The translations under genes and the position numbers were made by a program. Of a stretch of DNA of 64,000 nt, positions 14,056 through 39,892 are shown one piece after another. The notes under the pieces were generated by a model. It was not told the origin of the DNA, did no database searches, and saw only the letters and a program-made list of their open reading frames with translations. Where the stretch lies: positions 93,664 to 157,663 of the forward strand of contig NIVC01002435.1 in the NCBI GenBank assembly GCA_002269645.1. Reading direction: 5' to 3'. The stretch comes from Macrostomum lignano (lineage: Eukaryota). The first letter of the stretch is position 1, and every line of letters starts with the position of its first letter.

Positions 14056-14539
14056 CTGTTACATTGGCAAACATATCTTAGATTAAATTCAATGCTTTTC
14101 TTGCTTGCTTTTCTTAGGTTAAATTAAGTCCAAATGGGCTGCAAAAATGATATAAATTTAATATTTTCTAAATAAATAATAATAATATATAATATACATA
14201 TTAAACAGACTAACATAATACCATTTATATGAATATATATTTATTTTATTTCTTATTTAATTAAGCCTAGCCAAAAGAATCAAGCTTATTTAATTAAGTA
14301 CAAATATAAGCTGTCTAAAAATAATAAATAAAGTTATTATTAATAATAAAATGGCATAGTTTTTAGTGTAGGCCTATTTAAGATAGGGAAAAAAAAGCCA
14401 TTTTTTTAATGAAAAATTTCATAACTTTTTTATTACTTGATTAATTTTCAAAAGTTTGGTGTCATTTCACTCATAACATCTAGGGCTATAACATAGCATG
14501 GTTAAAAATACAATTTTGAAAAAATTTTTTACTGGACAC

Positions 14540-15467: not shown

Positions 15468-16793
15468 CTGGACTAGACACCCTACTATTATATTTTATCC
15501 ATAACTTTTTTATTTTGTTTATTTTAATAAATGTTAAAAACTGATATAAAGAAAAGACTTGCTACTACAAAATTGTGCAGTCACATTATTTTGACCATCA
15601 GAATGAGATATTGGAATAATAGGAACAAAAATAAAAATAAATTATAAAATATACTAAAATAATGACATGGAGATGAACCATTCAGAACCAAACTTCCATA
15701 AACAAAGTCTGAATTATATAAGTTTGTCATAAGCTAAAGCTTAAACCTTTAAGAAATGGAACCACAATAAGCATTCAGAAGATGGCCTATGCATCCGGCA
15801 TCCAAAAAATTTCCCCTATGCCGAGTATGACAATGCAGATGCAGCATGGCTTGACTAGCTATAGTGACATATACAGAAGGATATAGCTGTGTTGTATGAG
15901 AAACAACAGCAATAATAGGTGGGTTTCTCGACAGATATTTAGACGAACAGACATTAAAAAATTGTCAGTAAATTTGACAAAACTTAGGATTCACCTGTGC
16001 TGTGGGCTGTGCTGATACCAGTGACAGGCAATAAATAGAATCTATTGCGATTTAGAAATTACTCATACAAGCCAGAGAGAGTTTTCGTAAGAGTCTTTTT
16101 AATTATTATATTATGTTTTATTATAAGTACATAATTACTAAAAATCTTCTTCTACTCCTAAACATTGCTGAAATCAAGAATATGTTAAATCAATTTGTTT
16201 AAAATTGATTTGAACAAATGCCATTGGCCCCGTTGAAAAAAAAGTTTATCCCACTCGCCCCATAAGCGGAGATAATTTTATTCTTAAAATATCTGTCTTC
16301 GCGATGCAATTAATTGACTAAGAACCGAATAAATGCTAATCTTTTGGTGTAACTTACCCGCTTTTGTGACGAACTCTCAAGAAATCAAACATTTTTCCGT
16401 AGTGTGGATTTTTCTGAATCAATTTTATCTATGGTTGATATCTAAACCCCCTTCATGCTATGCGTTTATTGAGCATACTAAATGTACTGTTCTAATGGTA
16501 CAATTCCAGGAAAATTGATTGTAGTATTCGATTCCAGTTGTCCATGACAATTGTCAATTGACAATCCGAACTTATAAAAATTTGCGAGAACTATTAATTT
16601 TACGTAAGCCTGCGACATAATCGAAAAAGTTCTAAAGGGTTTGTAAAAAATTCTGAGCCCGTAGTCATCAGAAAATTTGGGTCCTCAAAATTTAAATCAC
16701 AAATTATTGCCTATTGCAGGAGTCTGCACCAAAGACAACAATTAAAAACTGCTTAGTTGCATGGTCCCAAATTTACGTGTAACTGCATTGTAA

Positions 16794-16958
16794 AAAAGGA
16801 AAAAAACTGTAGACTTCAGATCGGCCCTCGTGTCTCTATCGCAGCCGAAGTATTACAAGTTTGAGTTTCCTCCCAATGTCTCGCCTGTGCAGGTTAGAAT
16901 GGTCTCAGACGACATGCTGTGCATGCGGGTGTCTGTACAGGAAACGACACTTAGATAA
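16794..16958 (+). pseudogene. Orphan coding fragment resembling the extracellular domain of SID-1/SIDT dsRNA transporters
   Basis: Translates VSLSQPKYYKFEFPPNVSPVQVRMVSDDMLCMRVSVQ. This matches the pattern SQPxYxxxxFP..V..V.V...S....C..VSVQ that I recall from SIDT1/2. It is a GC-richer island in AT-rich DNA, has a possible acceptor cttcag at 16819, stops at 16956, and no other SID exon is visible. Confidence 0.5.
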
Positions 16959-17524
16959 AAATTTAAGCCTTTCTTTTAGTCGTCTCGATTTAAAAACTTC
17001 AATGGTATTTGCCATACCTACTTAATTAGAACTATAATTCTAAAGGTGTCATGATATATTGCAGATTATTACTTAAATCAAAACATTGCTTCCACAATGT
17101 TCGAAAAGCCTTCATTAATTTGCAAGTCACTTTCTCCAGCACACAGCTTCAACAAATTCGTATGAAATTTGTGTGAAAATGAAAATGAAAAAGAGTATGA
17201 AATTTCAAACTTGTGAAATTTCGACCTATGAAATATTGTAAAGTTAATATACATTAAGTTAAAGGAAATTAATGTACTTGCTTCAATCGCTGATAAATGC
17301 AATCTATTAACAAGCCCTAATACTCCCGAATACTCGTACAGTAGGATATGTAGCTTCTCATCTGATTGGTTGGGATTTGATATCTGGCGTTGAACAAATC
17401 GCTGGCGATTTACAAATAAGTGAAATAAGCTGAAATGAAGCGTGCTGCTAGGGTATCCTTCTAGTCAGTTGTTTGTATCTTCATTGCTAGAAAGCTCTCA
17501 GAATCATTGTTTTATCAAAGCGAG

Positions 17525-18412
17525 ATGAAGAAGGCTGGAAAGTCCACCATCTCCGCCAGCGACTGCAGCTCGGCAAAGGAGCAGCAGGCGGAGCAGCAGG
17601 CGGAGCAGCAGGCGGAGCAGCAGGCGGAGCAGCAGGCGGAGCAGCAGGCGGAGCAGATTTTAGCCGCGGCCGACGCTCTGCTGGAAGTCAACCGGTGCCT
17701 GACGTCGCACCAGTCGGCGCTGCAGTCGCTCAGCAGCCGTGTGGCGGGCATCGAGGAGGCGACTCACAGATTTGAGCTGCAGGCGGCGCTGCCGTCTTTC
17801 GTTTGGTGCATCGACAATTTCGGGCGCAGCTTCAGTCAGGCCAGGGCCGGGCAGCAGGAGAGGCTGGTCAGCGAGCCCTTCCGCCTGGCCCCGTACAGCT
17901 ACGTGATGCGGATGTCCGCCTGCCTGTTCGGGGAATCCGCAGGTGCGACAGAAGCTGATTATCTGCTGGGTTGATGTGACTTTTTGATTGGTAGATTGAT
18001 TGATTGGTTGATTTAATTATTTATTTATTTATTGGTTCATTGATTTACAACCCCCTCCCCTCGATCCGCAGTCCGCGGCCGCTGCCTCTCCGTGTTTGTC
18101 TGCTTCCTGCCCGGCGAGTTCGACAGCCTGCTGGAGTGGCCCTTCAACAAGCGGCTGTACATCACCGCCCTGGACCTGAGCGGTGCCGGCCGCCACCACA
18201 GCCGGGTGCTGATCCCGGGCCGGTTGGAGGGCAACTTCAACCGGTCCTACCTGCGGCGGCCCGCCGGCGGCCAGAGCCCCTGGTTTGGCGTGCGCAACTT
18301 CATGGAGCTGAGCCGGCTGGAGAACGGCGGCCAGTTCGTGCGCGGCAACCGCCTGCACCTGCGGCTGGAGGTGCCGCTGGACGAGCCGCTGGTTGCCACG
18401 GGGACTGAATGA
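17525..18412 (+). CDS. TRAF-like protein (coiled coil + MATH domain, no RING or zinc fingers), 2 exons: 17525-17942, 18072-18412
   Basis: FVWCIDNF, SEPF..PYSY.M, LSVFVCFLPGEFDSLLEWPF, FGVRNFMEL and LHLRLEV are MATH/TRAF-C motifs. Phase-1 intron gcag|gtgcga...ccgcag|tc. (EQQA)n is encoded by a 12-bp repeat. Confidence 0.85.
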
Positions 18413-18599
18413 AAGAGAATTGATCCGCCTGACCCGGCGCAGTGACATTTGATTCACAGTTTAAAAAGCACCTGTCTGATATCTGTTTCAAACTTTCTCT
18501 GCCGACTATCTGTAGCTTAAGCCTCTGTCTTATTAACTAAGCTGACTGCTGCGAAATACAAGCTTGCAAAGGGAAGCTTGCAACTTCCGCCTTGTGTTT

Positions 18600-18830
18600 C
18601 TCTCACAGCTCAGAGCTGCTGCCCAATCACAGCAGGGTGAACTGCAGCTCAGAGCTGCTGCCCAATCACAGCAGAGTGGACTGCAGCTCAGAGCTGCTGC
18701 CCAATCACAGCAGGGTGAACTGCAGCTCAGAGCTGCTGCCCAATCACAGCAGGGTGAACTGCAGCTCAGAGCTGCTCCCCAATCACAGCAGAGTGAACTG
18801 CAGCTCAGCTTCAATTGCCACTCGCTCACA
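18600..18830 (-). repeat. 39-bp minisatellite (~5 copies) plus a short flank homologous to the element at 24135-25253
   Basis: Unit cagctcagagctgctgcccaatcacagcagggtgaactg. Its flank cagcttcaattgccactcgctcac resembles cagcttcattcgccagccgctcac at ~25027. Confidence 0.85.
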
Positions 18831-19822
18831 TGTTGATGCAAAATGGCCGGTTCAGCTGCGTTCTAACGGCAAACAAGAATTTATCGATTGAAAGTTCCCA
18901 CTTGACTCCCGCATGAAAGTCCCATACGGCATTGACAGTCAGATTAAATATATTTACACCAGTTTCGTATAGGCAAACGATTGCTAGAAAACTCGGGTCT
19001 AAAAAGTTCGAATTACTTGACCGTGTTAGATCGAAGCGGCGCACAACAGGGGCTCGAAAATTCGAGGCCCGCGGGCGCATGGGGGCCAAACACAGAGACA
19101 CAGGAGAGAGAGTCAACAGTCAGGAGTCCCTGTGCCGTCTGCATCGCATCGGAGGACCCTGCAGAAGGCGCAATGTCAACACCTAACGAGCAAACTTCTC
19201 CGCCTATGTGAGTCTCAAGCACTCGACTCAGGCGCTGAGAGCCGTTTAATGTTTGTCATGGCTGTCATGGATCTGGCGGCAGAGCGCTGCACTTTAGACC
19301 GCTTGGTCACTTGGTCACGACTTGCCAGTCCTATAAGTATGATTATGTTCGTTTTGAGAGCCTTTTTAAAATGGATTCTACATGATTTTTGTAATAAAAT
19401 AAATGTACTTTTACGCTCTATGCGGTAAGCTTCAAGGTAAAAAATAAACTGACCAATCAATTTTCCAGCAGCAGGGTGAATAAGTCGGGAACACAATGCC
19501 TTCTTTGTTGCTGACTCCTCACCAATCAATGCTCAGCCGATCAGCCTTGAGTACTTTGGTATCGCAGGGATAGAGAAATCTTTTTTAATAAGCAGTCGGA
19601 TCCAAACTTCTATAGGAATAAATTGAATTTGAATTTGAAAAGCTAAAAATCTTTGGATTTACGATCCCCCTACTCGCCTGTGCTCAAAGCAGCCAGTGAC
19701 AGGCCGGGGGGGGGGAGGCCGGGGGCCGCTGAGCACAAGTGGGCCGGTCGCATCTCCAATGAAAAAGTGAAACCGAGGCGAAAGAAAAGCGGGAGAGGCG
19801 GCTGAGAGCGGGCCATGCAGGC

Positions 19823-21603
19823 ATGCCGGCAGGCGGCAGGCAGCACCCGTGGCGCAGTTGGCGCATCGCTGAAAATCAAAACGCCTGCGCTGACGAGCAA
19901 CTGCGCAGGCGGATGCGCGCGTTTGAGGCGGCGCATCGGCGCGAGGTGGCGCGCATCGCGGCCGAGTGCCGCCAAGCGAGGGGCGGCGACGGCGACAGCA
20001 AAGGCGGCGGCCCCGCCTTCCCCTACCTGGAGAAGCGGAACGCGATCGCGGTGCGGTCGGCGGCGAGGCCGGAGGGCCCGGGCAGCAGAACGCTGCAGCT
20101 GGCGCGGTCGGCGCTGGCCCGCCTGCGGCTCGAATCCGGCGCCGTGACGGCGGCGCGGACACGCGACGGCGAGAGCGCGCGTGAGCGCCGGGGACTTGAT
20201 TGGGGGATGTGGCTGCAAGGGTTGTGCAGTGCTACATGTACTCCGGCTGGGTGTACAGAACTCCTTGATGCTGCAGTCTCAGTGATGAGAAACTGCAATG
20301 CCAGAATACTAAACACAACAAATCCAATGCGATGTTTGGGCCTTTGGTCACTGCTGACTGGGTGTACAGCGGCCCAGACACTTGAATCGTCAGGCATGTA
20401 CACGGGGACCCGGGGACTTTGGCTCGAGAATGTGCCCTCATATAGATCAGGTGTCGGCAATTATTATTACCTCAAGAGCCAGATAAAGAATTCAGATAAT
20501 TGCTGCATGAGGGCCGGGTGAGGGAGGAAAGGAGTGGGAATAGAGGAAAGAGAAGAGAAGAGATTAGAGGTGAGAGGCGAGATAGGAGATGGGATGAGAG
20601 CGAAGAGTCGAGAGAAGAGAGGAGATGAGAGAGAAGAGAGGAGATGAGAGAGAAGAGAGGAGATGAGAGAGAAGAGAGGAGATGAGAGAGAAGAGAGGAG
20701 ATGAGAGAGAAGAGAGGAGATGAGAGAGAAGAGAGGAGATGAGAGAGAAGAGAGGAGATGAGAGAGAAGAGAGGATATGAGAGAGAAAAGAGGAGATGAG
20801 AGAGAAGAGAGGAGATGAGAGAGAAGAGAGGAGATGAGAGAGAAGAGAGGAGATGAGAGAGAAGAGAGGAGATGAGAGAGAAGAGAGGAGATGAGAGAGA
20901 AGAGAGGATATGAGAGAGAAGAGAGGAGATGAGAGAGAAGAGAGGATATGAGAGAGAAGAGAGGATATGAGAGAGAAAAGAGGAGATGAGAGAGAAAAGA
21001 GGAGATGAGAGAGAAAAGAGGAGATGAGAGAGAAGAGAGATGAGAGAAAATAGAGAATAGGGAAGAGAGAAGAGAACTGAGAGAAGAGCTGAGAAGGGAC
21101 AAAACCTTAGGCGGGCCGGATTGTGGAGTTCAAAGGACCCGAAGGCCGGATAGAGAGACTTCGTGGGCCACATGTGGCCGGATTTTGCCGCCGATCCCTG
21201 GAACGCTCGAAGACACCTACAATCCAGTCGTGCTGGATGATCATTTTGATCTTATTCTGAAGCCACTGATGAAATCCCCCGGTTTCTGCTTTCAGCGGTC
21301 AGCATCGAGGTACGGCAGGGGCGGCCGCCGCCGCTAGCGCCGATCCTGCCGGCGCCCCTGCGTCTGCAGCTGCTGCCGGAGGGCCGGGCGGCGGAGCTCC
21401 TCGCCGACGCGGAGCGGCGCCGCCTTCGCCGCCTCGAAGCAGCCCGCGCCAGCGCCCGCAGCCTGGACGGCCAGGTCTCCGACTTCGGCCTGCTGCCGCC
21501 GATCGCGCCGGCCCGCTGTCACCATGGCAACCAGGAAAGCAAGGACTCAAAGATAGCGGCTTTGTCAGACGAACAGGCGCGGTTTTCAGCAATAAAATCT
21601 TAG
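19823..21603 (+). CDS. Uncharacterised ~221-aa protein with an N-terminal helical/coiled-coil segment (weak resemblance to the CCDC190 family), exons 19823-20180 and 21296-21603
   Basis: GC-rich open frames joined by the donor gcgc|gtgagc (20181) and acceptor ctgctttcag|cg (21295), both phase 1. ENQNACADEQLRRRMRAFEAAHRREVARIAAEC is amphipathic. The family assignment is only a recollection-level resemblance. Confidence 0.55.
20520..21090. repeat. 19-bp purine-rich minisatellite in an intron
   Basis: Unit gagatgagagagaagagag. Confidence 0.95.
21518..21531. promoter_or_regulatory. RFX X-box motif (GTCACCATGGCAAC); a second imperfect X-box lies at 22156-22169
   Basis: Fits the GTNRCC-N0-3-RGYAAC consensus exactly. 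Function is untested. Confidence 0.4.
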
Positions 21604-22624
21604 CGGCCTTAGCGGCAAAAATAGCCATATTTGATTCATTTATTCTGCCCTGACTGGATTTCTCATTGCGCGACTCAAGCGCGCAGGCCGCAGAGGGCAG
21701 CCGTGACAATATAATAGAGAAAGCACAGGTGAGAGTTTTATTAACAGGCCAACAGTAATGCAGTTCTTAATGACCCGACTAAAGCCAGCTGCAGTGCTGA
21801 GCAATAAATTCCATATAATTAATTGATTGCTGAGCTACCAAACTACATGTATCTGGCTGCGATGGCCCACAGCATGCGCTGCCGGCTGTTCCAGTCAACC
21901 CAGCAGCCAAGAATTTTTTTGCTGCCCCCCCCGAAAAGAGCCCGAAAGCAGACCAGAGGCTTCTTTAACCCGCTTTCTGTTGCTTGAAGCCAACAATAGC
22001 GAGCGGAGAAGCCGAGAGCTCAGGAAACACAGGCGGCATTCACTGCCTGCCGTAGCGACTGAGCACGGCTTTATCCGGAATCCGCATTGAGCAGCCGGGA
22101 CAAAGCATGCGGGTTGAAATTATCCGCGAAAAAAGTGAAACAAAAGGAGACACAAAACGCCATGGCAACAGGCGATAGATGAAGGCCCAACTAACAATAA
22201 AATTTGCTAATTGAAAATTTAAACAAATTTTTGCTTCCAGCTTTAATCTTTTAAAAATCAGAATTCCGTTTAGTAGCTGAGCCAAGAATTAAAACAAAAG
22301 AACTGTACATGCAAGCTAACAAATCAATAGATACATTTTGTCTGCACATGTAATGGAATAATTTTTACTATTCGGCTGTAAAATATGAGCCAACTAAAGT
22401 CATTTATTCTTACAACAAAACAACTCGTAGAAAATATTCTTGAAGAAAATGTTTTTTTTGGACGGAACTAACTGGCAATTCCTGATAAATTAAGGATGAT
22501 TTTCAAAGCATAAAGGATTTAATAAGTTAAGAGGTAAAATGAAAAGCTGAATTGGTATTGGGAACGAATTTTGTGAAAGTGGCTGGCAACTGTTGCAGCA
22601 GAAATTAACACAAAGTAATTCAGG

Positions 22625-23220
22625 CAGGCAAGCGATCGATATTTCGGGGTGGGGGTACAGAGGCAAAAAATTCAAGCGATTAATATTTTGGGGTAGGGGT
22701 AGAGAGTCAGAGAACCCAAGCAATCGATATTTTGGGGTGGGGGTAGAGAGGCAGAGAATCCAAGCGATCGATATTTTGGGGTGAGAGTAGAGAGGCAGAT
22801 AGTCCAAGCAATCGATATTTTGGGGTAGGGGTAGAGAGGCAGAGAATCCAAGCAATCGATATTTTGGGGTAGGGGTAGAGAGGCATAGAATCCAAGCGAT
22901 CGATATTTTGGGGTGGGGTACAGAGGCGGAGAATCCAAGCGATCGATATTTTGGGGTGGGAAGAGAGGCGGAGAATCCAAGCGATCGATATTTTGGGGTG
23001 GGGGTAGAGAGGCAGATAGTCCAAGCAATCGATATTTTGGGGTAGGGGTAGAGAGTCAGAGAACCCAAGCAATCGATATTTTGGGGTAGGGGTAGAGAGT
23101 CAGAGAACCCAAGCAATCGATATTTTGGGGTGGGGATACAGAGGCGGAGAATCCAAGCGATCGATATTTTGGGTGGGGTAGAGAGGCAGATAATCCAAGC
23201 GATCGATATTTTGGGGTGGG
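22625..23220. repeat. ~40-43-bp minisatellite downstream of NICN1
   Basis: Unit approximately aagcgatcgatattttggggtgggggtagagaggcagagaatcc. Confidence 0.95.
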
Positions 23221-23324
23221 GTAACGGGGCAGGCGATCATCACATTACGCAAAGCAATTCAGTAAAAGCATTCAGAGGACTTAGAGAATTGTCAATCCGC
23301 CTGCACAAATGTCCTCCGGCGGTG

Positions 23325-25391
23325 TCAGGCGGCAAAGTGCAGCAGACTGACGTCGTAAGCATCGCCAGATTCATAGGCAGCCGACGCCGGCGCCGCCGAG
23401 GACAGCAGGCGATGCCGCAGGTAGGCCGTCGAGGCCGCAAACTCGGCGAGGCGTCGCGACATGCCGGGAAGTCGGGCGAGGCCGCCGCCACCGCCGCCAC
23501 CGCCGGCTCCGACGTCGTCCTCGGCGCAGCGGACTCGGGCCAGCGGGTCGGCTGGAGCGGCGAAGGCGGAGCCGCTCGGGCCCCCAGCGTGGCGACGAAC
23601 AATCTGCAGCGCCTCGATGCCGAACTCGCGCCACACCGGCGAGGGCTGCATGAGGACGAGGCGGACGGCCGCCACGCCGGTCACGGGCGCCTGCCAGTCT
23701 GGCTGGCCGAAGCGGAACTGCGCCAGGCCGCCCAGCTCGCTGTGCGGGTCCGGCATGAGGCGCCGCCTGTGCAGGCAGGTGCGCCACTCACCCGGCGAGG
23801 CCGCCGCCGCCGCCGCCGCCGCTGACCGTCGGCCGCCGGACGACGCGGATGGCGGAGGCGGCGGATGCTGCGGCTGCTGGGCGTAGCGGACCCGGATGCT
23901 GATGAAGCCGGTGTGGCAGTTGCGGAACCGGATCTCGTCGATGTCGACCCGGCCGACGCCGATGAAAGTCACCTCCTTGATGATGCAGCCTGCGGGCGAT
24001 CGGCGAGATTCTAAATGTACTTTTACTCAGTTTTCCGGTTTAGATTGACAGTGAAGTTTTGACCCAGCAAGCGCAAGTTCAGCGAGACTACTGCATGGAT
24101 GATATGAAATTTCAAGCCTATGAAATTCCCCTGCCCAGAGCTGCTGCCCAATCACAGCAGGGTGACTGCAGCTCAGAGCGTCTGCCCAATCACAGCAGTG
24201 TGAACTGCAGCTCAGAGCTGCTGCCCAATCACAGCAGGGTGAACTGCAGCTCAGAGCGTCTGCCCAATCACAGCAGGGTGAACTGCAGCCCAGAGCTGCT
24301 GCCCAATCACAGCAGTGTGAACTACAGCTCAGAGCTGCTGCCCAATCACAGCAGGGTGACTGCAGCTCAGAGCTGCTGCCCAATCACAGCAGGGTGACTG
24401 CAGCTCAGAGCTGCTGCCCAATCACAGCAGGGTGACTGCATCTCAGAGCTGCTGCCTAATCACAGCAGGGTGAACTGCAGCTCAGAGCTGCTGCCCAATC
24501 ACAGCAGGGTGACTGCAGCTCAGAGCTGCTGCCCAATCACAGCAGGGTGAACTGCAGCTCAGAGCTGCTGCCCAATCACAGCAGGGTGACTGCATCTCAG
24601 AGCTGCTGCCTAATCACAGCAGGGTGAACTGCAGCTCAGAGCTGCTGCCCAATCACAGCAGGGTGAACTGCAGCTCAGAGCTGCTGCCCAATCACAGCAG
24701 GGTGAACTGCAGCTCAGAGCTGCTGCCCAATCACAGCAGGGTGAACTGCATCTCAGAGCTGCTGCCTAATCACAGCAGGGTGAACTGCAGCTCAGAGCTG
24801 CTGCCCAATCACAGCAGGGTGAACTGCAGCTCAGAGCTGCTGCCCAATCACAGCAGGGTGAACTGCAGCTCAGAGCTGCTGCCTAATCACAGCAGGGTGA
24901 ACTGCAGCTCAGAGCTGCTGCCCAATCACAGCAGGGTGAACTGCAGCTCAGAGCTGCTGCCCAATCACAGCAGGGTGAACTGCAGCTCAGAGCTGCTGCC
25001 TAATCACAGCAGGGTGAACTGCAGCTCAGCTTCATTCGCCAGCCGCTCACTGTGGCTTCATTGAGAGAGGTGACGCTACCAGCCTCATTCACCAGCTGTG
25101 TATGCTAACCGTGGCCAACTTCGTTTAACCTGTAGCTCTAGCACCGCGCTTGTCCTCGACAATTTTTGTTCACCAGCCCATTAATTTGGAATCGAACCAA
25201 GGGACTCTGGCGAGAGAGTCGGACGCGCTCATCGCTAAGCCGCTCTCTGCCCCTTGGACAGCCGGTCAGGCAGTCAAATTAGTCTGCATCAGAAATGTCT
25301 GCATCAATCGATGCTCACCTGATGCGGTCTGCTTGACTCCCTCCAGCTGGCAGGGGTGCGGCGGACCCACGTTCAAGGGGACGATCTCGGC
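23325..25391 (-). CDS. NICN1: Nicolin-1 (tubulin polyglutamylase complex subunit), exons 25391-25319 and 23989-23325; no genomic ATG
   Basis: IRFRNCHTGFISIRVR, WRTCL...LMPDPHSE, LVLMQPSPVW..FGIEALQI and YDVSLL match nicolin-1. Phase-1 intron tcag|gtgagc...cccgcag|gc. Exon 1 (AEIVPLNVGPPHPCQLEGVKQTASG) starts at the acceptor ttgcag| with an in-frame stop just upstream. Confidence 0.9.
24135..25253 (-). mobile_element. tRNA-derived SINE carrying an expanded 39-bp minisatellite (~23 copies, 24135-25030), in the NICN1 intron
   Basis: Head ggggcagagagcggcttagcgatgagcgcgtccgactc...ggttcgattcc, with an A-box-like segment, a D-stem GCTT/GAGC and an exact B box at 25198-25188. The body runs directly into the array. 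Confidence 0.7.
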
Positions 25392-25429
25392 CTGCAATTC
25401 AATTTAAAATCCGTTTCTTACACTTTATG

Positions 25430-28400
25430 TCATATTCTGCCCTAGTCTGCCCTCTTCATCTTCTACTCTGCTCTATTCTCATTCTATTCTATTCGATTCT
25501 CATTCTATTCTGTTCCGTTCTCATTATATTCTGTTCTATTCTCATTCTACTTCTGTTCTGTTCTCATTCTATTCTGTTTTATTCTCATTCTATTCTATTC
25601 TGTTCTCATTCTATTCTGTTTTATTCTCATTCTATTCTGTTTTATTCTCATTCTATTCTATTCTGTTCTCATTCTATTCTGTTTTATTCTCATTCTATTC
25701 TGTTTTATTCTCATTCTATTCTGTTCTGTTCTCATTCTATTCTGTTTTATTCTCATTCTATTCTGTTTTATTCTCATTCTATTTTGTTCTGTTCTCATTC
25801 TATTCTGTTTTATTCTCATTCTATTCTGTTTTATTCTCATTCTATTCTGTTCTGTTCTCATTCTATTCTGTTTTATTCTCATTCTATTCTGTTTTATTCT
25901 CATTCTATTCTGTTCTGTTCTCATTCTATTCTGTTTTATTCTCATTCTATTCTGTTTTATTCTCATTCTATTCTGTTCTGTTCTCATTCTATTCTGTTTT
26001 ATTCTCATTCTATTCTGTTCTGTTTTCATTCTATTCTGTTTTATTCTCATTCTATTCTGTTCTGTTCTCATTCTATTCTGTTCTATTCTCATTCTATTCT
26101 GTTCTGTTCTCATTCTATTCTGTTTTATTCTCATTCTATTCTGTTCTGTTCTCATTCTTTTCTGTTCTATTCTCATTCTATTCTGTTCTGTTCTCATTCT
26201 ATTCTGTTCTATTCTCATTCTATTCTGTTCTGTTCTCATTCTATTCTGTTTTATTCTCATTCTATTCTGTTCTGTTCTCATTCTATTCTGTTCTATTCTC
26301 ATTCTATTCTGTTCTGTTCTCATTCTATTCTGTTTTATTCTCATTCTATTCTGTTCTGTTCTCATTCTATTCTGTTCTGTTCTCATTCTATTCTGTTTTA
26401 TTCTCATTCTATTCTGTTCTGTTCTCATTCTATTCTGTTTTATTCTCGTTCTTTTCTCATTCTATTCTCATTCTATTCTGTTCCGTTCTCATTCTATTCT
26501 GTTCTGTTCTCATTCTATTCTGTTTTATTCTCATTCTATTCTGTTCTGTTCTCATTCTATTCTGTTCTGTTCTCATTCTATTCTGTTTTATTCTCATTCT
26601 ATTCTGTTCTGTTCTCATTCTATTCTGTTTTATTCTCATTCTATTCTGTTCTGTTCTCATTCTATTCTGTTTTATTCTCATTCTATTCTGTTTTATTCTC
26701 ATTCTATTCTGTTCTGTTCTCATTCTATTCTGTTTTATTCTCATTCTATTCTGTTTATTCTCATTCTATTCTGTTCTGTTCTCATTCTATTCTGTTTTAT
26801 TCTCATTCTATTCTGTTCTGTTCTCATTCTATTCTGTTCTATTCTCATTCTATTCTGTTCTGTTCTCATTCTATTCTGTTATATTTTCGTTCTTTTCTCA
26901 TTCTATTCTCATTCTATTCTGTTCCGTTCTCATTCTATTCTGTTCTATTCTCATTTTACTTCTGTTCTATTGTGTTCTGTTCTCATTCTATTCTGTTCTA
27001 TTCTCATTCTATTCTCATTCTACTCTGTTTTATTCTCATTCTATTCTATTCTATTCTCATTCTATTCTGTTCCGTTCTCATTCTATTCTATTCTCATTCT
27101 ATTCTATTCTATTCTGTTTTGTTCTCATTCTACTTTGTTCTATTCTCATTCTATTCTGTTCTATTCTCGTTCTTTTCTGTTCTATTCTCATTCTATTCTG
27201 TTCTATTCTCATTCTACTCTGTTCTATTCTCATTCTATTCTGTTCTGTTCTCATTCTATTCTGTTCTGTTCTCATTCTATTCTGTTTTATTCTCATTCTA
27301 TTCTGTTCTGTTCTCATTCTATTCTGTTCTATTCTCATTCTATTCTGTTCTGTTCTCATTCTATTCTGTTTTATTCTCATTCTATTCTGTTCTGTTCTCA
27401 TTCTATTCTGTTCTATTCTCATTCTATTCTGTTCTGTTCTCATTCTATTCTGTTCTATTCTCATTCTATTCTGTTCTGTTCTCATTCTATTCTGTTTTAT
27501 TCTCATTCTATTCTGTTCTGTTCTCATTCTATTCTGTTCTATTCTCATTCTATTCTGTTCTGTTCTCATTCTATTCTGTTTTATTCTCATTCTATTCTGT
27601 TCTGTTCTCATTCTATTCTGTTCTGTTCTCATTCTATTCTGTTTTATTCTCATTCTATTCTGTTCTGTTCTCATTCTATTCTGTTTTATTCTCGTTCTTT
27701 TCTCATTCTATTCTCATTCTATTCTGTTCCGTTCTCATTCTATTCTGTTCTGTTCTCATTCTATTCTGTTTTATTCTCATTCTATTCTGTTCTGTTCTCA
27801 TTCTATTCTGTTCTGTTCTCATTCTATTCTGTTTTATTCTCATTCTATTCTGTTCTGTTCTCATTCTATTCTGTTTTATTCTCATTCTATTCTGTTCTGT
27901 TCTCATTCTATTCTGTTTTATTCTCATTCTATTCTGTTTTATTCTCATTCTATTCTGTTCTGTTCTCATTCTATTCTGTTTTATTCTCATTCTATTCTGT
28001 TTATTCTCATTCTATTCTGTTCTGTTCTCATTCTATTCTGTTTTATTCTCATTCTATTCTGTTCTGTTCTCATTCTATTCTGTTTTATTCTCATTCTATT
28101 CTGTTCTGTTCTCATTCTATTCTGTTCTATTCTCATTCTATTCTGTTCTGTTCTCATTCTATTCTGTTTTATTCTCGTTCTTTTCTCATTCTATTCTCAT
28201 TCTATTCTGTTCCGTTCTCATTCTATTCTGTTCTATTCTCATTTACTTCTGTTCTATTGTGTTCTGTTCTCATTCTATTCTGTTCTATTCTCATTCTATT
28301 CTCATTCTACTCTGTTTTATTCTCATTCTATTCTATTCTATTCTCATTCTATTCTGTTCCGTTCTCATTCTATTCTATTCTCATTCTATTCTATTCTATT

Positions 28401-31060
28401 CTGTTTTGTTCTCATTCTACTTTGTTCTATTCTCATTCTATTCTGTTCTATTCTCGTTCTTTTCTGTTCTATTCTCATTCTATTCTGTTCTATTCTCATT
28501 CTACTCTGTTCTATTCTCATTCTATTCTGTTCTGTTCTCATTCTATTCTGTTTTATTCTCATTCTATTCTGTTTTATTCTCATTCTATTCTGTTCTGTTC
28601 TCATTCTATTCTGTTTTATTCTCATTCTATTCTGTTTTATTCTCATTCTATTCTGTTCTGTTCTCATTCTATTCTGTTTATTCTCATTCTATTCTGTTCT
28701 GTTCTCATTCTATTCTGTTTTATTCTCATTCTATTCTGTTCTGTTCTCATTCTATTCTGTTCTATTCTCATTCTATTCTGTTCTGTTCTCATTCTATTCT
28801 GTTTTATTCTCATTCTATTCTGTTCTGTTCTCATTCTATTCTGTTCTATTCTCATTCTATTCTGTTCTATTCTCATTCTATTCTGTTCTATTCTCATTCT
28901 ATTCTGTTCTGTTCTCATTCTATTCTGTTTTATTTTCGTTCTTTTCTCATTCTATTCTCATTCTATTCTGTTCCGTTCTCATTCTATTCTGTTCTATTCT
29001 CATTTACTTCTGTTCTATTGTGTTCTGTTCTCATTCTATTCTGTTCTATTCTCATTCTATTCTCATTCTACTCTGTTTTATTCTCATTCTATTCTATTCT
29101 ATTCTCATTCTATTCTGTTCCGTTCTCATTCTATTCTATTCTCATTCTATTCTATTCTATTCTGTTTTGTTCTCATTCTACTTTGTTCTATTCTCATTCT
29201 ATTCTGTTCTATTCTCGTTCTTTTCTGTTCTATTCTCATTCTATTCTGTTCTATTCTCATTCTACTCTGTTCTATTCTCATTCTATTCTCATTCTATTCT
29301 GTTTTATTCTCATTCTATTCTATTCTATTCTCATTCTATTCTGTTCCGTTCTCATTCTATTCTATTCTCATTCTATTCTATTCTATTCTCATTCTAATTT
29401 GTTCTATTCTCATTCTATTCTGTTCTATTCTCATTCTATTCTGTTCTATTCTCGTTCTTTTCTGTTCTATTCTCATTCTATTCTGTTCTATTCTGATTCT
29501 ACTTTGTTCTATTCTCATTCTATTCTGTTTTGTTCTCATTCTACTTTGTTCTATTCTCATTCTATTCTGTTCTGTTCTCATTCTATTCTGTTCTATTCTC
29601 ATTCTACTTTGTTATATTCTCATTCTATTCTGTTCTATTCTCGTTCTATTCTGTTCCGTTCTCATTCTATTCTGTTCCGTTCTCATTCTATTCTATTCTC
29701 ATTCTATTCTATTCTATTCTGTTTTGTTCTCATTCTACTTTGTTCTATTCTCATTCTATTCTGTTCTATTCTCGTTCTTTTCTGTTCTATTCTCATTCTA
29801 TTCTGTTCTATTCTCATTCTACTTTGTTCTATTCTCATTCTATTCTGTTTTGTTCTCATTCTACTTTGTTCTATTCTCATTCTATTCTGTTCTATTCTCG
29901 TTCTTTTCTGTTTTATTCTCATTCTATTCTGTTCTATTCTCATTCTACTTTGTTCTATTCTCATTCTATTCTGTTTTGTTCTCATTCTACTTTGTTCTAT
30001 TCTGTTCTATTCTCGTTCTATTGTGTTCGATTCTCATTCTATTCTGTTCTATTCTCATTCTATTCTTATTCTATTCTGTTCCGTTCTCATTCTATTCTGT
30101 TCTATTCTCATTCTACTTCTGTTCTATTCTGTTCTGTTCTCATTCTATTCTGTTCTATTCTCATTCTATTCTCATTCTACTTCTGTTCTATTCTCATTCT
30201 ATTCTGTTTTATTCTCATTCTATTCTATTCTATTCTCATTCTATTCTGTTCCGTTCTCATTCTATTCTATTCTCATTCTATTCTATTCTATTCTCATTCT
30301 ATTCTGTTCTATTCTCATTCTACTTTGTTCTATTCTCATTCTATTCTGTTCTATTTTCGTTCTTTTCTGTTCTATTCTCATTCTATTCTGTTCTATTCTG
30401 ATTCTACTTTGTTCTATTCTCATTCTATTCTGTTTTGTTCTCATTCTACTTTGTTCTATTCTGTTCTATTCTCGTTCTATTGTGTTCGATTCTCATTCTA
30501 TTCTGTTCTATTCTCATTCTACTTTGTTCTATTCTCATTCTACTTTGTTCTATTCTCATTCTACTTTGTTCTATTCTCATTCTACTTTGTTCTATTCTCA
30601 TTCTACTTTGTTATATTCTCATTCTATTCTGTTCTATTCTCGTTCTATTCTGTTCTGTTCTCATTCTATTCTGTTTTATTCTCATTCTACTTTGTTCTAT
30701 TCTCATTATATTCTGTTCTATTCTCATTCTATTCTATTCTATTCTCATTCTATTCTGTTCTATTCTCATTCTATTCTATTCTATTCTAATTCTATTCTGT
30801 TCTATTCTCGTTCTATTGTGTTCTATTCTCATTCTATTCTGTTCTATTCTTATTTTATTCTGTTCTATTCTCATTCTACTTTGTTCTATTCTCGTTCTAT
30901 TGTGTTCTATTCTCAGTCTATTCTGTTCTACTCTCATTATATTCTGTTCTATTCTCGTTCTTATCTGTTCTATTCTCATTCTATTCTGTTCTATTCTGAT
31001 TCTATTTTGTTCTATTCTCGTTCTATTCTGTTCTATTCGTATTCTATTGTTCTATTTGCG
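25430..31060. repeat. 5.6-kb pentamer-based satellite (ttcta/ttctg/ttctc/attct) with 20/25-bp periodicity and internal block duplications
   Basis: Directly visible; explains the 1901-aa, 1143-aa and (MRIEQNR)n ORFs. Confidence 0.97.
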
Positions 31061-31337
31061 TTTATATTGCAATCATCCATCTCTAATCCACTAATTCTAT
31101 TAATACCTTGTACTACTACGGCACAATTTTAATCCCAAATATGTTCTGCAGTAGTTGACCCACGTAGAAAAAATCTAACAATAGTGCAAACTGTAAGCGA
31201 ATAAATCGCACTAAAGGACATCATGTACTTTGATAAGGACGGAATTACAAGTGCATTAAATTTAAGGCAAAAAACGAAGAACACAAATGGAAACTTTTGT
31301 TATAAAGCCTACAGTAGCACAATAAAAATCAGACACT

Positions 31338-31812
31338 GTGCAGGCTAGATTAGCAATCCACTCTGATCCCCAGCTCATCCGTGCAGGCTAGATTAGCAAT
31401 CCACTCTGATCCCCAGCTCAGCCGTGCAGGCTAGATTAGCAATCCACTCTGATCCCCAGCTCATCCGTGCAGGCTAGATTAGCAATCCAATTTGATCCCC
31501 AGCTCAGCCGTGCAGGCTAGATTAGCAATCCACTCTGATCCCCAGCTCAGCCGTGCAGGCTAGATTAGCAATCCACTCTGATCCCCAGCTCAGCCGTGCA
31601 GGCTAGATTAGCAATCCACTCTGATCCCCAGCTCATCCGTGCAGGCTAGATTAGCAATCCACTCTGATCCCCAGCTCATCCGTGCAGGCTAGATTAGCAA
31701 TCCACTCTGATCCCCAGCTCAGCCGTGCAGGCTAGATTAGCAATCCACTCTGATCCCCAGCTCAGCCGTGCAGGCTAGATTAGCAATCCACTCTGATCCC
31801 CAGCTCAGCCGT
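31338..31812. repeat. 43-bp minisatellite, ~11 copies, beginning ~17 nt after the PIH1D2 stop
   Basis: Unit gtgcaggctagattagcaatccactctgatccccagctcagcc. Confidence 0.95.
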
Positions 31813-31828
31813 GATCAGTCCAGCCGCC

Positions 31829-34800
31829 CTAGGCCGGAGGCAACGAGCCGACCACCGGCGCCCGCAGCAGCAGCTGCCGTTTCGCTCGCAGGAATCGCGC
31901 CGTGGCGTCGTCCGGGGCCACTTCGCAGGGCAGCTCGGCCTGCAGCAGCGGCGGCTTCGCGCTGTCATCGGCGTCGGCAGCGCGGCGCAGCGTCAACAGC
32001 CGGGGCTCCAGCCGGACGTCCAGCACGGCAGCTGATTCGGCGACCTGGCCGACGGAGACTCGCATGGTGAGCAGGCGCTCCACCCTGTTCACGGAGGTCG
32101 TGAGCTGCAACTGCTGCGGCTGTTGCTGATGAAGTCTTCCGCTGGGATTCTCAGGTCCGCCAAGCAGCAGCTGCGGCGATGCTGGCGAGTCGGATACGCT
32201 GAAAGAAACACGAAAGATTGCTGCTGAAGATTGTTGTGCATTATGAAGGCAGGCAGAGAAGACAGGCGCGTAGCTAAGTGCTAAGTTTTAATCATTAAGG
32301 ACAGCAAAAGAGCTGCAATACAGTCTCACTCAGGCCTCACTCAAGCCTCACCCAAGCCTCACTCAAGCCTTACCCAAAGCCTCACCCAAGCCTCACTCAA
32401 GCCTCATCCAAGCCTCATCCAAGCCTCACCCAAGCCTCACCCAAGCCTCACCCAAGACTCACCCAAGCCTCACCCAAGCCTTACCCAAGCCTTACCCAAG
32501 CCTTACCCAAGCCTCACCCAGGCCTCACGCAAGCCTCACCCAAGCCTCACTCAAGCCTCACCCAGGCCTCACCAAGGCCTCACCCAAGCCTCACCCAGGC
32601 CTCACCCAAGCCTCACCCAAGCCTCACGCAAGCCTCATCCAAGCCTCACTCAAGCCTCACCCAAGCCTCACTCAAGCCTCAAACAAGCCTCACGCAAGCC
32701 TCACCCAAGCCTCACCCAAGCCTCACGCAAGCCTCACCCAAGCCTTACCCAAGCCTCACTCAAGCCTCACGCAAGCCTCACCCAAGCCTCACGCAAGCCT
32801 CACCCAAGCCTCACCCAAGCCTCACCCAAGCCTCACCCAAGCCTCACCGAGGCCTCACCCAAGCCTCACCCAGGCCTCACCCAAGCCTCACCCAAGCCTC
32901 ACGCAAGCCTCATCCAAGCCTCACTCAAGCCTCACCCAAGCCTCACTCAAGCCTCAAACAAGCCTCACGCAAGCCTCACCCAAGCCTCACCCAAGCCTCA
33001 CGCAAGCCTCACCCAAGCCTTACCCAAGCCTCACTCAAGCCTCACGCAAGCCTCACCCAAGCCTCACGCAAGCCTCACCCAAGCCTTACCCAAGCCTCAC
33101 TCAAGCCTCACGCAAGCCTCCCCCAAGCCTCACCCAGGCAAAGGCGCCACTAGCGGTGCTGGAGTCTCATGCTGCGACTGCGTCTGGCGCTTGATCTGTG
33201 TCTGGGCCTCCACCAGCCGCTGCAGCGCCAAGTCGCCAGGCTGGTAGCCGAGGCCGCGGTGCAGCGCGGCCAGGAAGCCCGGCTCGACGAACAGCTTCTC
33301 CGACGCCGCCTGCAGAAGGTCGATGGTACCGTTGGCGTCGTCATCCTGAAGCTCGCCGGACAGCGGCCGGAGGTAGGCGCGCAGCCGCTGGGCGAGGCAG
33401 TGGCGCAACGCATGGACAACGAAGGCGCGAGCGTCGGCGTCGCGTTTCAATGCTGCAGCGGCGGAAGTCGCGGATGTCGTTGAAGACGACTCGGCGAGGC
33501 AGGCGGCTGGCAGCGCCTGTTGCAGAGTCTCGACATTGAAAGCAATCGGCAGCAGCAGGGCATCCGGCAGCTGCTGGCTCGGGAAGGGCCTGCCGACGTG
33601 GGCGCTTATGGTGGCCGAGGGGTCGGCGAGGTCGCAGCTGTGGGTGGGCGCGGCGGGTTGAATGCATATTCAAGGGTTAACCTAGGGTCACGGGTTCACC
33701 TAGGGTCACGGGTTCACCTAGGGTCACGGGTTCACCTAGGGTCACGGGTTCACCTAGGGTCACGGGTTCACCTAGGGTCACGGGTTCACCTAGGGTCACG
33801 GGTTCACCTAGGGTCACGGGTTCACCTAGGGTCACGGGTTCACCTAGGGTCACGGGTTCACCTAGGGTCACGGGTTCACCTAGGGTCACGGGTTCACCTA
33901 GGGTCACGGGTTCACCTAGGGTCACGGGTTCACCTAGGGTCACGGGTTCACCTAGGGTCACGGGTTCACCTAGGGTCACGGGTTCACCTAGGGTCACGGG
34001 TTCACCTAGGGTCACGGGATCACCTAGGGTCACGGGTTCACCTAGGGTCACGGGTTCACCTAGGGTCACGGGTTCACCTAGGGTCACGGGTTCACCTAGG
34101 GTCACGGGTTCACCTAGGGTCACGGGTTCACCTAGGGTCACGGGTTCACCTAGGGTCACGGGTTCACCTAGGGTCACGGGTTCACCTAGGGTCACGGGTT
34201 CACCTAGGGTCACGGGTTCACCTAGGGTCACGGGTTCACCTAGGGTCACGGGTTCACCTAGGGTCACGGGATCACCTAGGGTCACGGGATCACCTAGGGT
34301 CACGGGTTCACCTAGGGTCACGGGTTCACCTAGGGTCACGGGTTCACCTAGGGTCACGGGTTCACCTAGGGTCACGGGTTCACCTAGGGTCACGGGTTCA
34401 CCTAGGGTCACGGGTTCACCTAGGGTCACGGGTTCACCTAGGGTCACGGGTTCACCTAGGGTCACGGGTTCACCTAGGGTCACGGGTTCACCTAGGGTCA
34501 CGGGTTCACCTAGGGTCACGGGTTCACCTAGGGTCACGGGTTCACCTAGGGTCACGGGTTCACCTAGGGTCACGGGTTCACCTCTCACCTTTTGACGCGG
34601 CTCCAGCTCACAAACACGACGACCAGGCGGGCGGGTGCGAAGCCAGCGGGGAAGCCGACGACGGCAGTCTGGGACCCCGATGCCTCGGCCGAGGTGTCGC
34701 CGCCGTCGACGACCTTCAACTCGGCCAGGAAGCCAGACAGCAGGCTCTCCGAGTCGCCACCGGCGTCAGCGGAAGACGACGAGGCCTCGTCGGCGTCGTC

Positions 34801-36742: not shown

Positions 36743-39892
<3,150 letters not shown>

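What the first reader, a model, noticed from the sequence alone, without database searches (positions are those of the whole stretch)
25319..25410. NICN1 has no start codon: initiator Met probably donated by a trans-spliced leader
Seen in the sequence: exon 1 begins at a clean 3' splice site (ttttaaattgaattgcag|GCC GAG ATC) in phase 0, with an in-frame TAA just upstream. The first in-frame ATG lies deep inside the conserved nicolin core (RRRL-M-PDPHSE), downstream of the conserved FRN...SIRVR block. Upstream lie only 5.6 kb of satellite and the PIH1D2 3' end. Established: flatworm spliced leaders end in AUG, and that AUG can act as the initiator Met (shown in Schistosoma). Inference: SL-AUG + GCC gives M-A-E-I-V..., with a +4 G.
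Basis: partly seen in the sequence, partly recalled or inferred. Interest (0 to 1): 0.85.

Follow-up and report, generated by a model that had tools for sequence, protein, structure and literature searches.

The report
Nicolin gene borrowing spliced-leader start codon
The nicolin-1 gene of the flatworm Macrostomum lignano has no start codon of its own and almost certainly takes its AUG from the spliced leader trans-spliced onto its first exon; flatworms are already known to do this, so it is a clean new example, not a new phenomenon.

Summary
The window is Macrostomum lignano (GenBank contig NIVC01002435.1). Nicolin-1 lies on the minus strand as two exons, 25391..25319 and 23989..23325. Exon 1 starts directly after gaaTTGCAG|GCC, which matches the published M. 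lignano trans-splice acceptor motif [T/C]TNCAG. An in-frame TAA lies five codons upstream. The mature mRNA has no ATG in any frame for 306 nt. The first ATG is the invariant internal Met of the LMPxPH motif.

The M. lignano spliced leader is CGGTCTCTTACTGCGAAGACTCAATTTATTGCATG. It ends in ATG and would read M-AEIVPLNV. That N-terminus is 11 residues to a conserved Pro; the mode in 66 orthologues is 12.

GenBank's transcript-based models of both gene copies are labelled 'partial'. One starts exactly at the acceptor. The other starts 6 nt downstream, after a second AG that is also in frame.

The 6.4 kb upstream contains no phase-0 ATG…|GTRAG exon. All but 365 nt of it is satellite, and a same-strand PIH1-family gene precedes it, so the layout meets the published operon rule.

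I could not reach any SL-junction reads, so trans-splicing at this exact site is inferred. Initiation at the SL AUG is established in Schistosoma and Echinococcus and has been noted in passing for Macrostomum.

The parts
25392..25397 (-). Trans-splice acceptor TTGCAG (AG = 25393-25392). The SL would be joined to base 25391.
   Evidence: It matches the M. lignano trans-splice acceptor motif [T/C]TNCAG (PMC8629364). The GenBank CDS of the duplicate copy starts at the equivalent base.
25404..25406 (-). In-frame TAA five codons upstream of exon 1. It closes the reading frame in the outron.
25319..25391 (-). NICN1 exon 1 (73 nt, phase 0 start). It encodes AEIVPLNVGPPHPCQLEGVKQTAS plus the first base of Gly, and has no ATG in any frame.
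   Evidence: It is homologous to the N-termini of nicolin orthologues and forms two beta-strands of the predicted sandwich.
25386..25387 (-). Second AG (GAG|ATC), 6 nt inside exon 1. It is a possible alternative in-frame trans-splice acceptor that would give M-IVPLNV.
   Evidence: The GenBank CDS of this locus (P0001, Mlig033480g3) starts at ATC 25385. It does not match the [T/C]TNCAG motif. Its use is inferred.
23990..25318 (-). Intron 1 (GTGAGC...CCCGCAG). It contains a 39-bp satellite (24136-25029) and a tRNA-like fragment (about 25140-25260).
   Evidence: The junction is confirmed by P0001 and P0002.
23325..23989 (-). NICN1 exon 2 coding part, ending at stop TGA 23327-23325. It contains the conserved FRN..SIRVR, W.TC...LMPDPHSE, LMQPSPVW and C-terminal YDVSLL motifs.
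23754..23756 (-). First ATG of the mature mRNA in any frame (Met104). It is the invariant Met of LMPxPH and is not a plausible start.
   Evidence: A product starting here would lack 6 of the 9 predicted beta-strands.
25398..25460 (-). Unique proximal outron. It contains the only GTRAG donor-like site in the 6.4 kb upstream (GTAAGA at 25421, 30 nt before the acceptor and preceded by an in-frame TAA).
25461..31056 (.). 5.6-kb satellite (21-nt unit TTCTATTCTGTTCTATTCTCA on the + strand) filling the intercistronic region.
   Evidence: Its length differs in the duplicate locus.
31057..31828 (-). 3' flank of the upstream gene: 43-bp satellite (31338-31813) plus 281 nt of unique AT-rich sequence.
31829..32110 (-). 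Last coding exon of the upstream same-strand PIH1-family gene (PIH1 CS-like domain), with stop TAG at 31831-31829.

Best explanation
The nicolin-1 gene of Macrostomum lignano is a two-exon gene whose genomic sequence lacks an initiator codon. I propose four steps.

1. Its pre-mRNA is probably the downstream part of a polycistronic transcript that also carries a PIH1-family gene.
2. That transcript is cut at the 3' splice site TTGCAG|G (25392/25391, minus strand) by SL trans-splicing.
3. The 35-nt spliced leader ends in ...UUGCAUG. This places its terminal AUG directly in frame with GCC GAG AUC, and the SL AUG becomes the only AUG in the first ~310 nt of the mRNA.
4. The SL AUG is used as the initiator, giving a 246-aa protein M-AEIVPLNVGPP... 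Some molecules may use the AG 6 nt downstream and give M-IVPLNV...

Shown here: gene structure, absence of any genomic ATG, the fit of the acceptor to the motif, the frame, the fit to orthologue N-termini, the absence of an upstream cis exon, and 5'-partial transcript-based annotation ending at the acceptor.

Inferred: that SL reads map at this exact site, and that ribosomes start at the SL AUG.
For: 1. Species and SL. P0001 and P0002 are M. lignano proteins, and the window is identical to NIVC01002435.1. The SL sequence, the acceptor motif and the ~30% trans-splicing rate come from PMC8629364.
2. Acceptor. TTGCAG|GCC is in phase 0 with a TAA five codons upstream. The chance expectation is about 0.014.
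3. No ATG in any frame for 306 nt. The first is the invariant Met of LMPxPH.
4. Exon 1 is coding. In 25 of 95 hits (excluding the two M. lignano copies), the phmmer alignment starts within the residues exon 1 encodes. BLASTP aligns residue 3 with residue 4 of an isopod nicolin. AlphaFold places exon-1 residues in two beta-strands of an XRCC1-N-like sandwich.
5. N-terminal length. With the SL Met, 11 residues precede the conserved Pro. The orthologue mode is 12, and 31 of 66 lie within +/-2. Only the Met is missing.
6. No cis exon. There is no phase-0 ATG..|GTRAG exon in the 6437 nt back to the upstream gene's stop. The single GTRAG there is preceded by a stop codon. No SL copy is present in the window.
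7. Annotation. The GenBank models come from a pipeline that cuts transcripts at mapped SL reads (PMC5730564). Both copies are 'partial'. P0002 starts at GCC, not IELQAEIV, so its transcript ends within 2 nt of the acceptor.
8. Operon layout. The same-strand PIH1_CS gene ends 6437 nt upstream, and only 365 nt of that is non-satellite. This is below the 1-kb repeat-adjusted operon threshold of PMC8629364.
9. Precedent. The SL AUG acts as initiator in Schistosoma (Cheng et al. 2006, cited in PMC12582326 and PMC5832876) and in Echinococcus, where 143 of 187 SL cDNAs are full-length only with the SL ATG (PMC3510090). The SL ATG was noted as a start codon in Macrostomum (PMC10468722).
Against: - I saw no SL-exon junction read, cDNA or peptide. 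Protein searches that included the SL-encoded peptide found no transcript-derived entry.
- The SL AUG has U at -3, a weak Kozak context. Judging from the S. mansoni SL as I recall it (not checked here), the schistosome SL that is used as an initiator ends in the same UUGCAUG.
- The annotation of this exact locus starts 6 nt downstream of the proposed site, so the precise junction is uncertain.
- The meaning of the '.g3' suffix in the locus tags (third gene of a transcriptional unit?) could not be verified.
- The duplicate copy carries a 1-bp deletion in exon 2. This shows that at least one copy may be decaying or mis-assembled.
Confidence: 0.8

Rival explanations
1. Same mechanism at a different junction. 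The SL is joined mainly, or also, at the AG 6 nt downstream (GAG|ATC, 25386/25385). The protein then begins M-IVPLNV and lacks Ala-Glu.
For: The GenBank CDS of this very locus (P0001) begins at ATC, immediately after GAG. The junction is in frame (6 nt). The N-terminal length (9 residues to the anchor Pro) is still within the orthologue range.
Against: GCCGAG does not match [T/C]TNCAG. The sequence-identical duplicate locus is annotated from GCC. The conserved Glu aligned with orthologues would be lost.
Confidence: 0.3
2. A small upstream exon ending in ATG (or ATG plus a few codons), missed by the annotation, is cis-spliced to 25391 and supplies the start codon.
For: The acceptor is a normal 3' splice site, and flatworms share acceptors between cis- and trans-splicing (PMC12582326). 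There are 21 weak ATG..|GT phase-0 candidates in the upstream 6.4 kb.
Against: None of the 21 has a GTRAG donor, the motif found at most M. lignano introns. The only GTRAG is 30 nt from the acceptor and follows a TAA. 94% of the region is satellite. The transcript-based annotation found no such exon and left both copies 5'-partial.
Confidence: 0.07
3. Translation starts inside the gene, at Met104 or at a near-cognate codon in exon 1 (in-frame TTG, GTG or CTG at residues 7, 9 and 17). The SL AUG is not used.
For: Near-cognate codons exist in frame. The SL AUG has a weak -3 U.
Against: The SL AUG would be the first AUG met by a scanning ribosome and is in frame. Met104 is an invariant internal residue, and a product starting there would lose 6 of the 9 predicted beta-strands. 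Exon-1 residues are conserved with orthologues from residue 3 onward.
Confidence: 0.05
4. The locus is a decaying or untranslated duplicate, so the missing ATG reflects loss of function and not a mechanism.
For: M. lignano is a hidden polyploid with many duplicates (PMC5730564, PMC10468722). The other copy has a frameshifting 1-bp deletion.
Against: The window copy has an intact 245-codon frame. All invariant nicolin residues and the C-terminal YD..LL motif are present. Both copies have the same ATG-less 5' end and an identical acceptor. The deletion lies in a G5 homopolymer of a PacBio-based assembly and may be an error.
Confidence: 0.03

Closest known systems
Flatworm SL 3'-terminal AUG used as initiator methionine (Schistosoma; Cheng, Cohen, Ndegwa & Davis 2006, J Biol Chem 281:733, cited in PMC12582326 and PMC5832876)
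   Same: The SL ends in ...UUGCAUG (the schistosome ending is from my recollection, not checked here). It is joined at a 3' splice site directly in frame with an ORF that has no AUG of its own. The conserved N-terminus is complete only with the SL Met.
   Different: The species is a free-living macrostomorph, not a neodermatan parasite. Use of the AUG is inferred here, not shown by translation assays.
Echinococcus granulosus SL-bearing cDNAs (PMC3510090)
   Same: The same argument applies: the SL AUG is required if the N-terminus is to correspond to conserved orthologues. 143 of 187 SL clusters are full-length only with the SL ATG.
   Different: That study had cDNAs carrying the SL. Here only genome sequence and a transcript-derived annotation are available.
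slORFs: open reading frames created by SL-supplied start codons (slORFfinder, PMC9851317)
   Same: The start codon is supplied in trans by the leader, and genome annotation therefore misses or truncates the ORF.
   Different: slORFs in nematodes, ascidians and Euglena mostly use NUG or near-cognate codons and often create new or alternative ORFs. Here a canonical AUG completes a conserved protein.
M. lignano operons with repeat-inflated intercistronic spacers (Ustyantsev & Berezikov 2021, PMC8629364)
   Same: There is an upstream same-strand gene, a trans-spliced downstream gene, and a repeat-adjusted spacer (365 nt) below their 1-kb threshold.
   Different: The raw spacer of 6.4 kb, with 5.6 kb of one satellite, is large. 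The polycistronic precursor was not observed here.
Nicolin-1 (NICN1)
   Same: There are 95 further homologues at E<=1e-3. Named ones are nicolin-1 or nicolin-1-like from insects; the best hit, from a snail, and an isopod hit are unnamed 'hypothetical' proteins. Invariant N46, M101, QP..W motifs and the C-terminal Y..L tail are present.
   Different: It carries low-complexity Pro/Ala/Gly inserts, and no genomic start codon.

Membership tests
mRNA that takes its initiator AUG from a flatworm spliced leader | The species has an SL RNA whose leader ends in AUG | tested here: met
   Species identified as M. lignano. The published SL is CGGTCTCTTACTGCGAAGACTCAATTTATTGCATG (PMC8629364).
mRNA that takes its initiator AUG from a flatworm spliced leader | [quoted passage not shown] | tested here: met
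   TTGCAG|G matches [T/C]TNCAG. There is only one GTRAG in the 6437 nt upstream, 30 nt from the acceptor and behind a stop codon.
mRNA that takes its initiator AUG from a flatworm spliced leader | SL-containing reads or cDNA across the junction | not testable with these tools
   No M. lignano transcript data could be reached. Indirect evidence: the SL-read-guided annotation ends both copies at or within 6 nt of the acceptor and marks them 5'-partial.
mRNA that takes its initiator AUG from a flatworm spliced leader | The SL AUG is in frame with the conserved ORF, with no intervening stop | tested here: met
   ATG+GCC GAG ATC... reads MAEIVPLNV... through to the stop.
mRNA that takes its initiator AUG from a flatworm spliced leader | No alternative AUG near the 5' end, and the N-terminus is complete only with the SL Met | tested here: met
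   The first ATG in any frame is at nt 306 and is the invariant internal Met. N-terminal length is 11 against an orthologue mode of 12.
mRNA that takes its initiator AUG from a flatworm spliced leader | Translation actually starts at the SL AUG (peptide, Ribo-seq or reporter) | not testable with these tools
   This needs an experiment.
Nicolin-1 (NICN1) | Significant full-length sequence similarity to proteins named nicolin-1 | tested here: met
   phmmer found 97 proteins at E<=1e-3. Named members are nicolin-1 or nicolin-1-like from Gryllus, Nesidiocoris, Bacillus rossius and Cloeon. There is no Pfam model.
Nicolin-1 (NICN1) | Family-invariant residues and the C-terminal Y-D/E-x-x-L-L tail | tested here: met
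   Invariant G23, N46, M101, Q137, P138, W142 and F145, and near-invariant Y234 and L239, are all present in P0001.
Downstream cistron of an M. lignano operon | Same-strand upstream gene with a repeat-adjusted distance below 1 kb, and a trans-spliced downstream gene (rule of PMC8629364) | tested here: met
   The PIH1_CS gene stop is at 31829. Of the 6437-nt spacer, 6072 nt is tandem repeat and 365 nt is unique. Trans-splicing of the downstream gene is itself inferred.
Downstream cistron of an M. lignano operon | A polycistronic precursor transcript spanning both genes | not testable with these tools
   There is only the locus-tag suffix 'g3' in both copies, and its meaning could not be confirmed in the paper.

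The most novel reading that the evidence does not exclude
Obligate dependence on the SL AUG for a deeply conserved ciliary/tubulin-associated protein, in Macrostomorpha, an early-branching flatworm lineage. This would imply that SL-supplied initiation is ancestral to Rhabditophora and not a neodermatan (parasite) trait. It would also imply that many of the M. lignano proteins labelled 'partial' in GenBank are in fact complete once the SL Met is added. In addition, two in-frame acceptors 6 nt apart may produce two N-terminal proteoforms (MAEIV... and MIV...).
Probability: 0.45. Interest if true: 0.4.

Novelty: new member of a known kind. Interest (0 to 1): 0.3.

Why it matters
- It gives a concrete, easily tested case of a conserved protein whose start codon is not in its gene. 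This extends SL-AUG initiation from parasitic flatworms to a free-living model that has transgenesis.
- It explains why GenBank lists this protein, and probably many other M. lignano proteins, as 'partial'. Adding the SL Met would complete them.
- It shows that an operon spacer can hold 5.6 kb of satellite and the downstream gene still be processed.

The mechanism itself has been known since 2006, so a specialist would not be surprised.

Tried and rejected
- Whole-protein search. It was swamped by low-complexity words and returned only the two M. lignano entries.
- Search with the SL-encoded peptide VSYCEDSIYCM fused to the low-complexity-free protein, aimed at transcript-derived ORFs carrying the SL. 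It gave only 12 candidates and no such protein.
- Search for the name of the upstream PIH1 gene, to confirm a shared transcriptional unit. It returned only an older, error-ridden UniRef model.
- Junction pattern SL-3'end + N{0,6} + exon 1 in metagenome contigs. No hits, which is uninformative because that collection holds no M. lignano transcripts.
- Supplementary files of PMC5730564, PMC8629364 and PMC5816591, and a full-text search for Mlig033480, Mlig013537 and NICN1. Nothing found.
- Cheng et al. 2006 is not held in the library, so it is cited only through papers that cite it.
- Rfam across the window: no SL RNA or any other RNA family.
- SL sequence in the window with up to 3 mismatches: none, so the ATG is not supplied by a nearby genomic SL copy.
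- ARAGORN on the tRNA-like intron fragment: negative.
- Pfam on the protein: there is no nicolin model, so family assignment rests on phmmer hits and their names.
- A 30-nt micro-intron from GTAAGA (25421) to the acceptor: rejected, because every ATG upstream of that donor meets an in-frame stop codon before it.
- ATG depletion of the first 306 nt as evidence: rejected, because 2.1 ATGs are expected and P(0) is about 0.12.
Full report
**Where and what.** The finding lies on the minus strand. Read as reverse complement, 25410..25319 is ttttaaattgaattgcag|GCC GAG ATC GTC CCC TTG AAC GTG GGT CCG CCG CAC CCC TGC CAG CTG GAG GGA GTC AAG CAG ACC GCA TCA G|gtgagc.
- The acceptor AG is 25393-25392.
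- Exon 1 is 25391..25319 (73 nt).
- The donor GT is 25318-25317.
- The in-frame TAA is at 25406-25404.

The sequence shows the acceptor cgcccgcag|GCTGC, with exon 2 at 23989..23325 and TGA at 23327-23325. The spliced CDS is 738 nt, which is 245 codons plus the stop.

**Organism and published models.** A protein search returned two GenBank entries from Macrostomum lignano, both named 'hypothetical protein ..., partial'.
- P0001 is BOX15_Mlig033480g3. It is 243 aa, 100% identical, and starts at IVPLNV.
- P0002 is BOX15_Mlig013537g3. It starts at AEIVPLNV.

Both contain ..KQTASGCIIKEV.., which confirms the exon 1-exon 2 junction from transcript-based models. The locus of P0001 (NIVC01002435.1) is base-for-base identical to window 13325..35385. 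The locus of P0002 is a near-identical duplicate on another contig. Its 120 nt upstream of the exon are identical, and its CDS begins exactly at the G of GCC. P0002's different C-terminus comes from a 1-bp deletion in a G5 run of exon 2.

**Family.** A full HMMER scan of 1.84 billion representatives found 97 proteins at E<=1e-3, mostly 190-240 aa. Those that carry names are nicolin-1 or nicolin-1-like, from Gryllus, Nesidiocoris, Bacillus rossius and Cloeon. The best hit, from the snail Bradybaena, is annotated only as a hypothetical protein, as is the isopod Armadillidium hit. Pfam has no model for the family. A 30-sequence alignment shows that P0001 has every invariant residue, including the Met of LMPxPH (M101 in P0001 numbering).

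**The missing start codon.** The spliced CDS has no ATG in any frame for 306 nt. The first is in frame at 23756-23754 and is that invariant internal Met.

Exon 1 is clearly coding.
- In 25 of the 95 hits other than the two M. lignano copies, the best HMMER alignment begins within the 22 residues of P0001 that exon 1 encodes.
- BLASTP aligns residue 3 (counting a donated Met as 1) with residue 4 of the isopod protein, at 40% identity over 58 residues.
- An AlphaFold2 model (mean pLDDT 75.8) puts exon-1 residues into two beta-strands of a sandwich. The closest solved relatives of that sandwich are the XRCC1 N-terminal domain and IFT25.
- A product starting at Met104 would lack six of the nine predicted strands.

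In an N-terminal alignment of 66 orthologues that begin with Met, the distance from Met to a conserved Pro has a mode of 12 residues. The M. lignano protein with one added Met has 11, and 31 of 66 orthologues lie within +/-2. So only the Met is missing, not an N-terminal exon.

**Where the Met can come from.** M. lignano trans-splices about 30% of its genes to a single 35-nt leader, CGGTCTCTTACTGCGAAGACTCAATTTATTGCATG. The top motif at trans-splice acceptors is [T/C]TNCAG, positioned at the junction (PMC8629364). The acceptor here is TTGCAG|G. That motif occurs 0.0028 times per nt per strand in the window. One ending in phase 0 in the five codon slots between the TAA and the first homologous residue is expected about 0.014 times. 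Joining the SL gives ...UUGC AUG GCC GAG AUC, which reads MAEIVPLNV with G at +4.

The alternative is a cis exon ending in ATG. I enumerated every ATG-initiated open frame ending in phase 0 at a GT in the 6437 nt back to the upstream gene's stop codon. There are 21, and none has the GT[G/A]AG donor typical of the species. The whole region has a single GTRAG, at 25421, 30 nt before the acceptor and preceded by an in-frame TAA. No copy of the SL lies in the window.

**Annotation as indirect transcript evidence.** The GenBank models derive from the Mlig_RNA_3_7 assembly. In that assembly, SL-containing reads were trimmed and mapped, and their peaks were used by the TBONE pipeline to cut transcriptional units into mRNAs. 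ORFs were then called by TransDecoder (PMC5730564). A 5'-partial ORF starts at the first in-frame codon of its transcript. P0002 begins AEIV, not IELQAEIV, even though the frame is open back to the TAA. Its transcript therefore ends within 2 nt of the acceptor. This is what a cut at an SL peak would give.

P0001 begins at ATC 25385, directly after a second AG (GAG|ATC). The two loci are identical here. The simplest reading is that both AGs receive the SL. Both junctions are in frame, but this is inference.

**Operon context.** Upstream on the same strand lies a gene whose last exon (31829..32110) encodes a PIH1 CS-like domain (E = 5e-5). Further upstream is a Ser/Thr kinase. Between the PIH1 gene's TAG (31831-31829) and the acceptor lie, in order:
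- a 43-bp satellite (31338-31813);
- 281 nt of unique AT-rich sequence;
- a 5.6-kb satellite (25461-31056);
- 69 nt of unique sequence.

That leaves 365 nt of non-repeat sequence in all. Ustyantsev and Berezikov found that repeats inflate operon spacers in this genome, and they call pairs operonic when the repeat-adjusted distance is under 1 kb. This pair qualifies. Downstream cistrons must be trans-spliced to be capped, so the layout fits the proposal.

**Comparison with what is known.**
- All reported flatworm SLs end in AUG, and Cheng et al. (2006) showed it can serve as the initiator (cited in PMC12582326 and PMC5832876).
- In Echinococcus, 143 of 187 SL-bearing clusters are full-length only with the SL ATG, and the same argument from orthologue N-termini was used there (PMC3510090).
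- Such ORFs now have a name, slORFs (PMC9851317).

The mechanism is therefore established, and has been noted for this genus. What is new is the specific gene, and the clean demonstration that its genomic copy cannot encode its own start.

**What remains unshown.** I could not reach any M. lignano reads or cDNAs. The following all gave nothing:
- a protein search that included the SL-encoded peptide;
- a junction-pattern scan of the metagenome collection;
- supplementary tables of three papers;
- a full-text search for the locus tags.

The meaning of the 'g3' suffix was not confirmed. Trans-splicing at this base and initiation at the SL AUG are therefore well-supported inferences. I put them at about 0.8 jointly. 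The exact junction (25391 or 25385) is open.

**Verdict.** This is a new member of a known kind, with interest about 0.3.

Noticed in passing
window 25385-25391 (minus); L002 9995-10001: GenBank's CDS for this locus (P0001) starts at ATC, 6 nt inside exon 1 and directly after a second AG (GAG|ATC). The identical duplicate locus is annotated from GCC. This suggests two in-frame trans-splice acceptors 6 nt apart.
   Followed up: partly
L001 about 11885 versus window exon 2 (about 23585): The duplicate NICN1 copy (Mlig013537g3) has a 1-bp deletion in a GGGGG run. This frameshifts the C-terminal third of P0002. It is either a decaying homeologue or a homopolymer assembly error.
   Followed up: partly
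window 25461-31056: A 5.6-kb satellite (21-nt unit built on TTCTA, about 266 copies) sits between two same-strand genes that otherwise look operonic. The spacer is about 2.4 kb shorter in the duplicate locus (about 4.0 kb in L001 against 6.4 kb here).
   Followed up: partly
window 24136-25029 and 18606-18808: The same 39-bp satellite (CAGAGCTGCTGCCCAATCACAGCAGGGTGAACTGCAGCT) fills most of NICN1 intron 1 and recurs 5.5 kb away.
   Followed up: no
window about 25140-25260 (minus), in intron 1: A tRNA-like stretch (…GGTTCGATTCCAA… T-arm motif) that ARAGORN does not call. It is possibly a tRNA-derived SINE fragment.
   Followed up: partly
window 25416-25421 (minus): A perfect donor-like GTAAGA lies only 30 nt upstream of the trans-splice acceptor, inside the outron. 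It is the only GTRAG in the 6.4 kb upstream.
   Followed up: yes
window 22629-23221 and 20610-21039: A 44-bp satellite begins about 100 nt after the NICN1 stop codon, and a 19-bp GA-rich satellite lies further downstream. The 3' UTR and poly(A) site of NICN1 were not defined.
   Followed up: no
window 36743-39892 (minus): Exons of a Ser/Thr (MAPK-like) protein kinase lie upstream of the PIH1-family gene on the same strand. It has its own ATG and may be the first gene of the same transcriptional unit.
   Followed up: partly
window 35732-36061 (+): An ORF with an RNase H-like motif (…[20 protein letters not shown]…), probably a retroelement remnant, lies between the kinase and the PIH1-family gene. 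This identification is by eye only.
   Followed up: no
window 34990-35010 (minus): The PIH1-family gene has its own ATG 7 nt after a CAG acceptor (ccccgcag|CCCAGCGATGAGC). If the SL were joined there, the SL AUG would be out of frame. The real trans-splice site of that gene is unknown.
   Followed up: no
model m0ec286cc3d13 (P0001): The predicted nicolin fold is a beta-sandwich closest to the XRCC1 N-terminal domain (E = 2.5e-5) and to IFT25. A C-terminal helix follows a disordered Gly/Ala-rich linker.
   Followed up: partly
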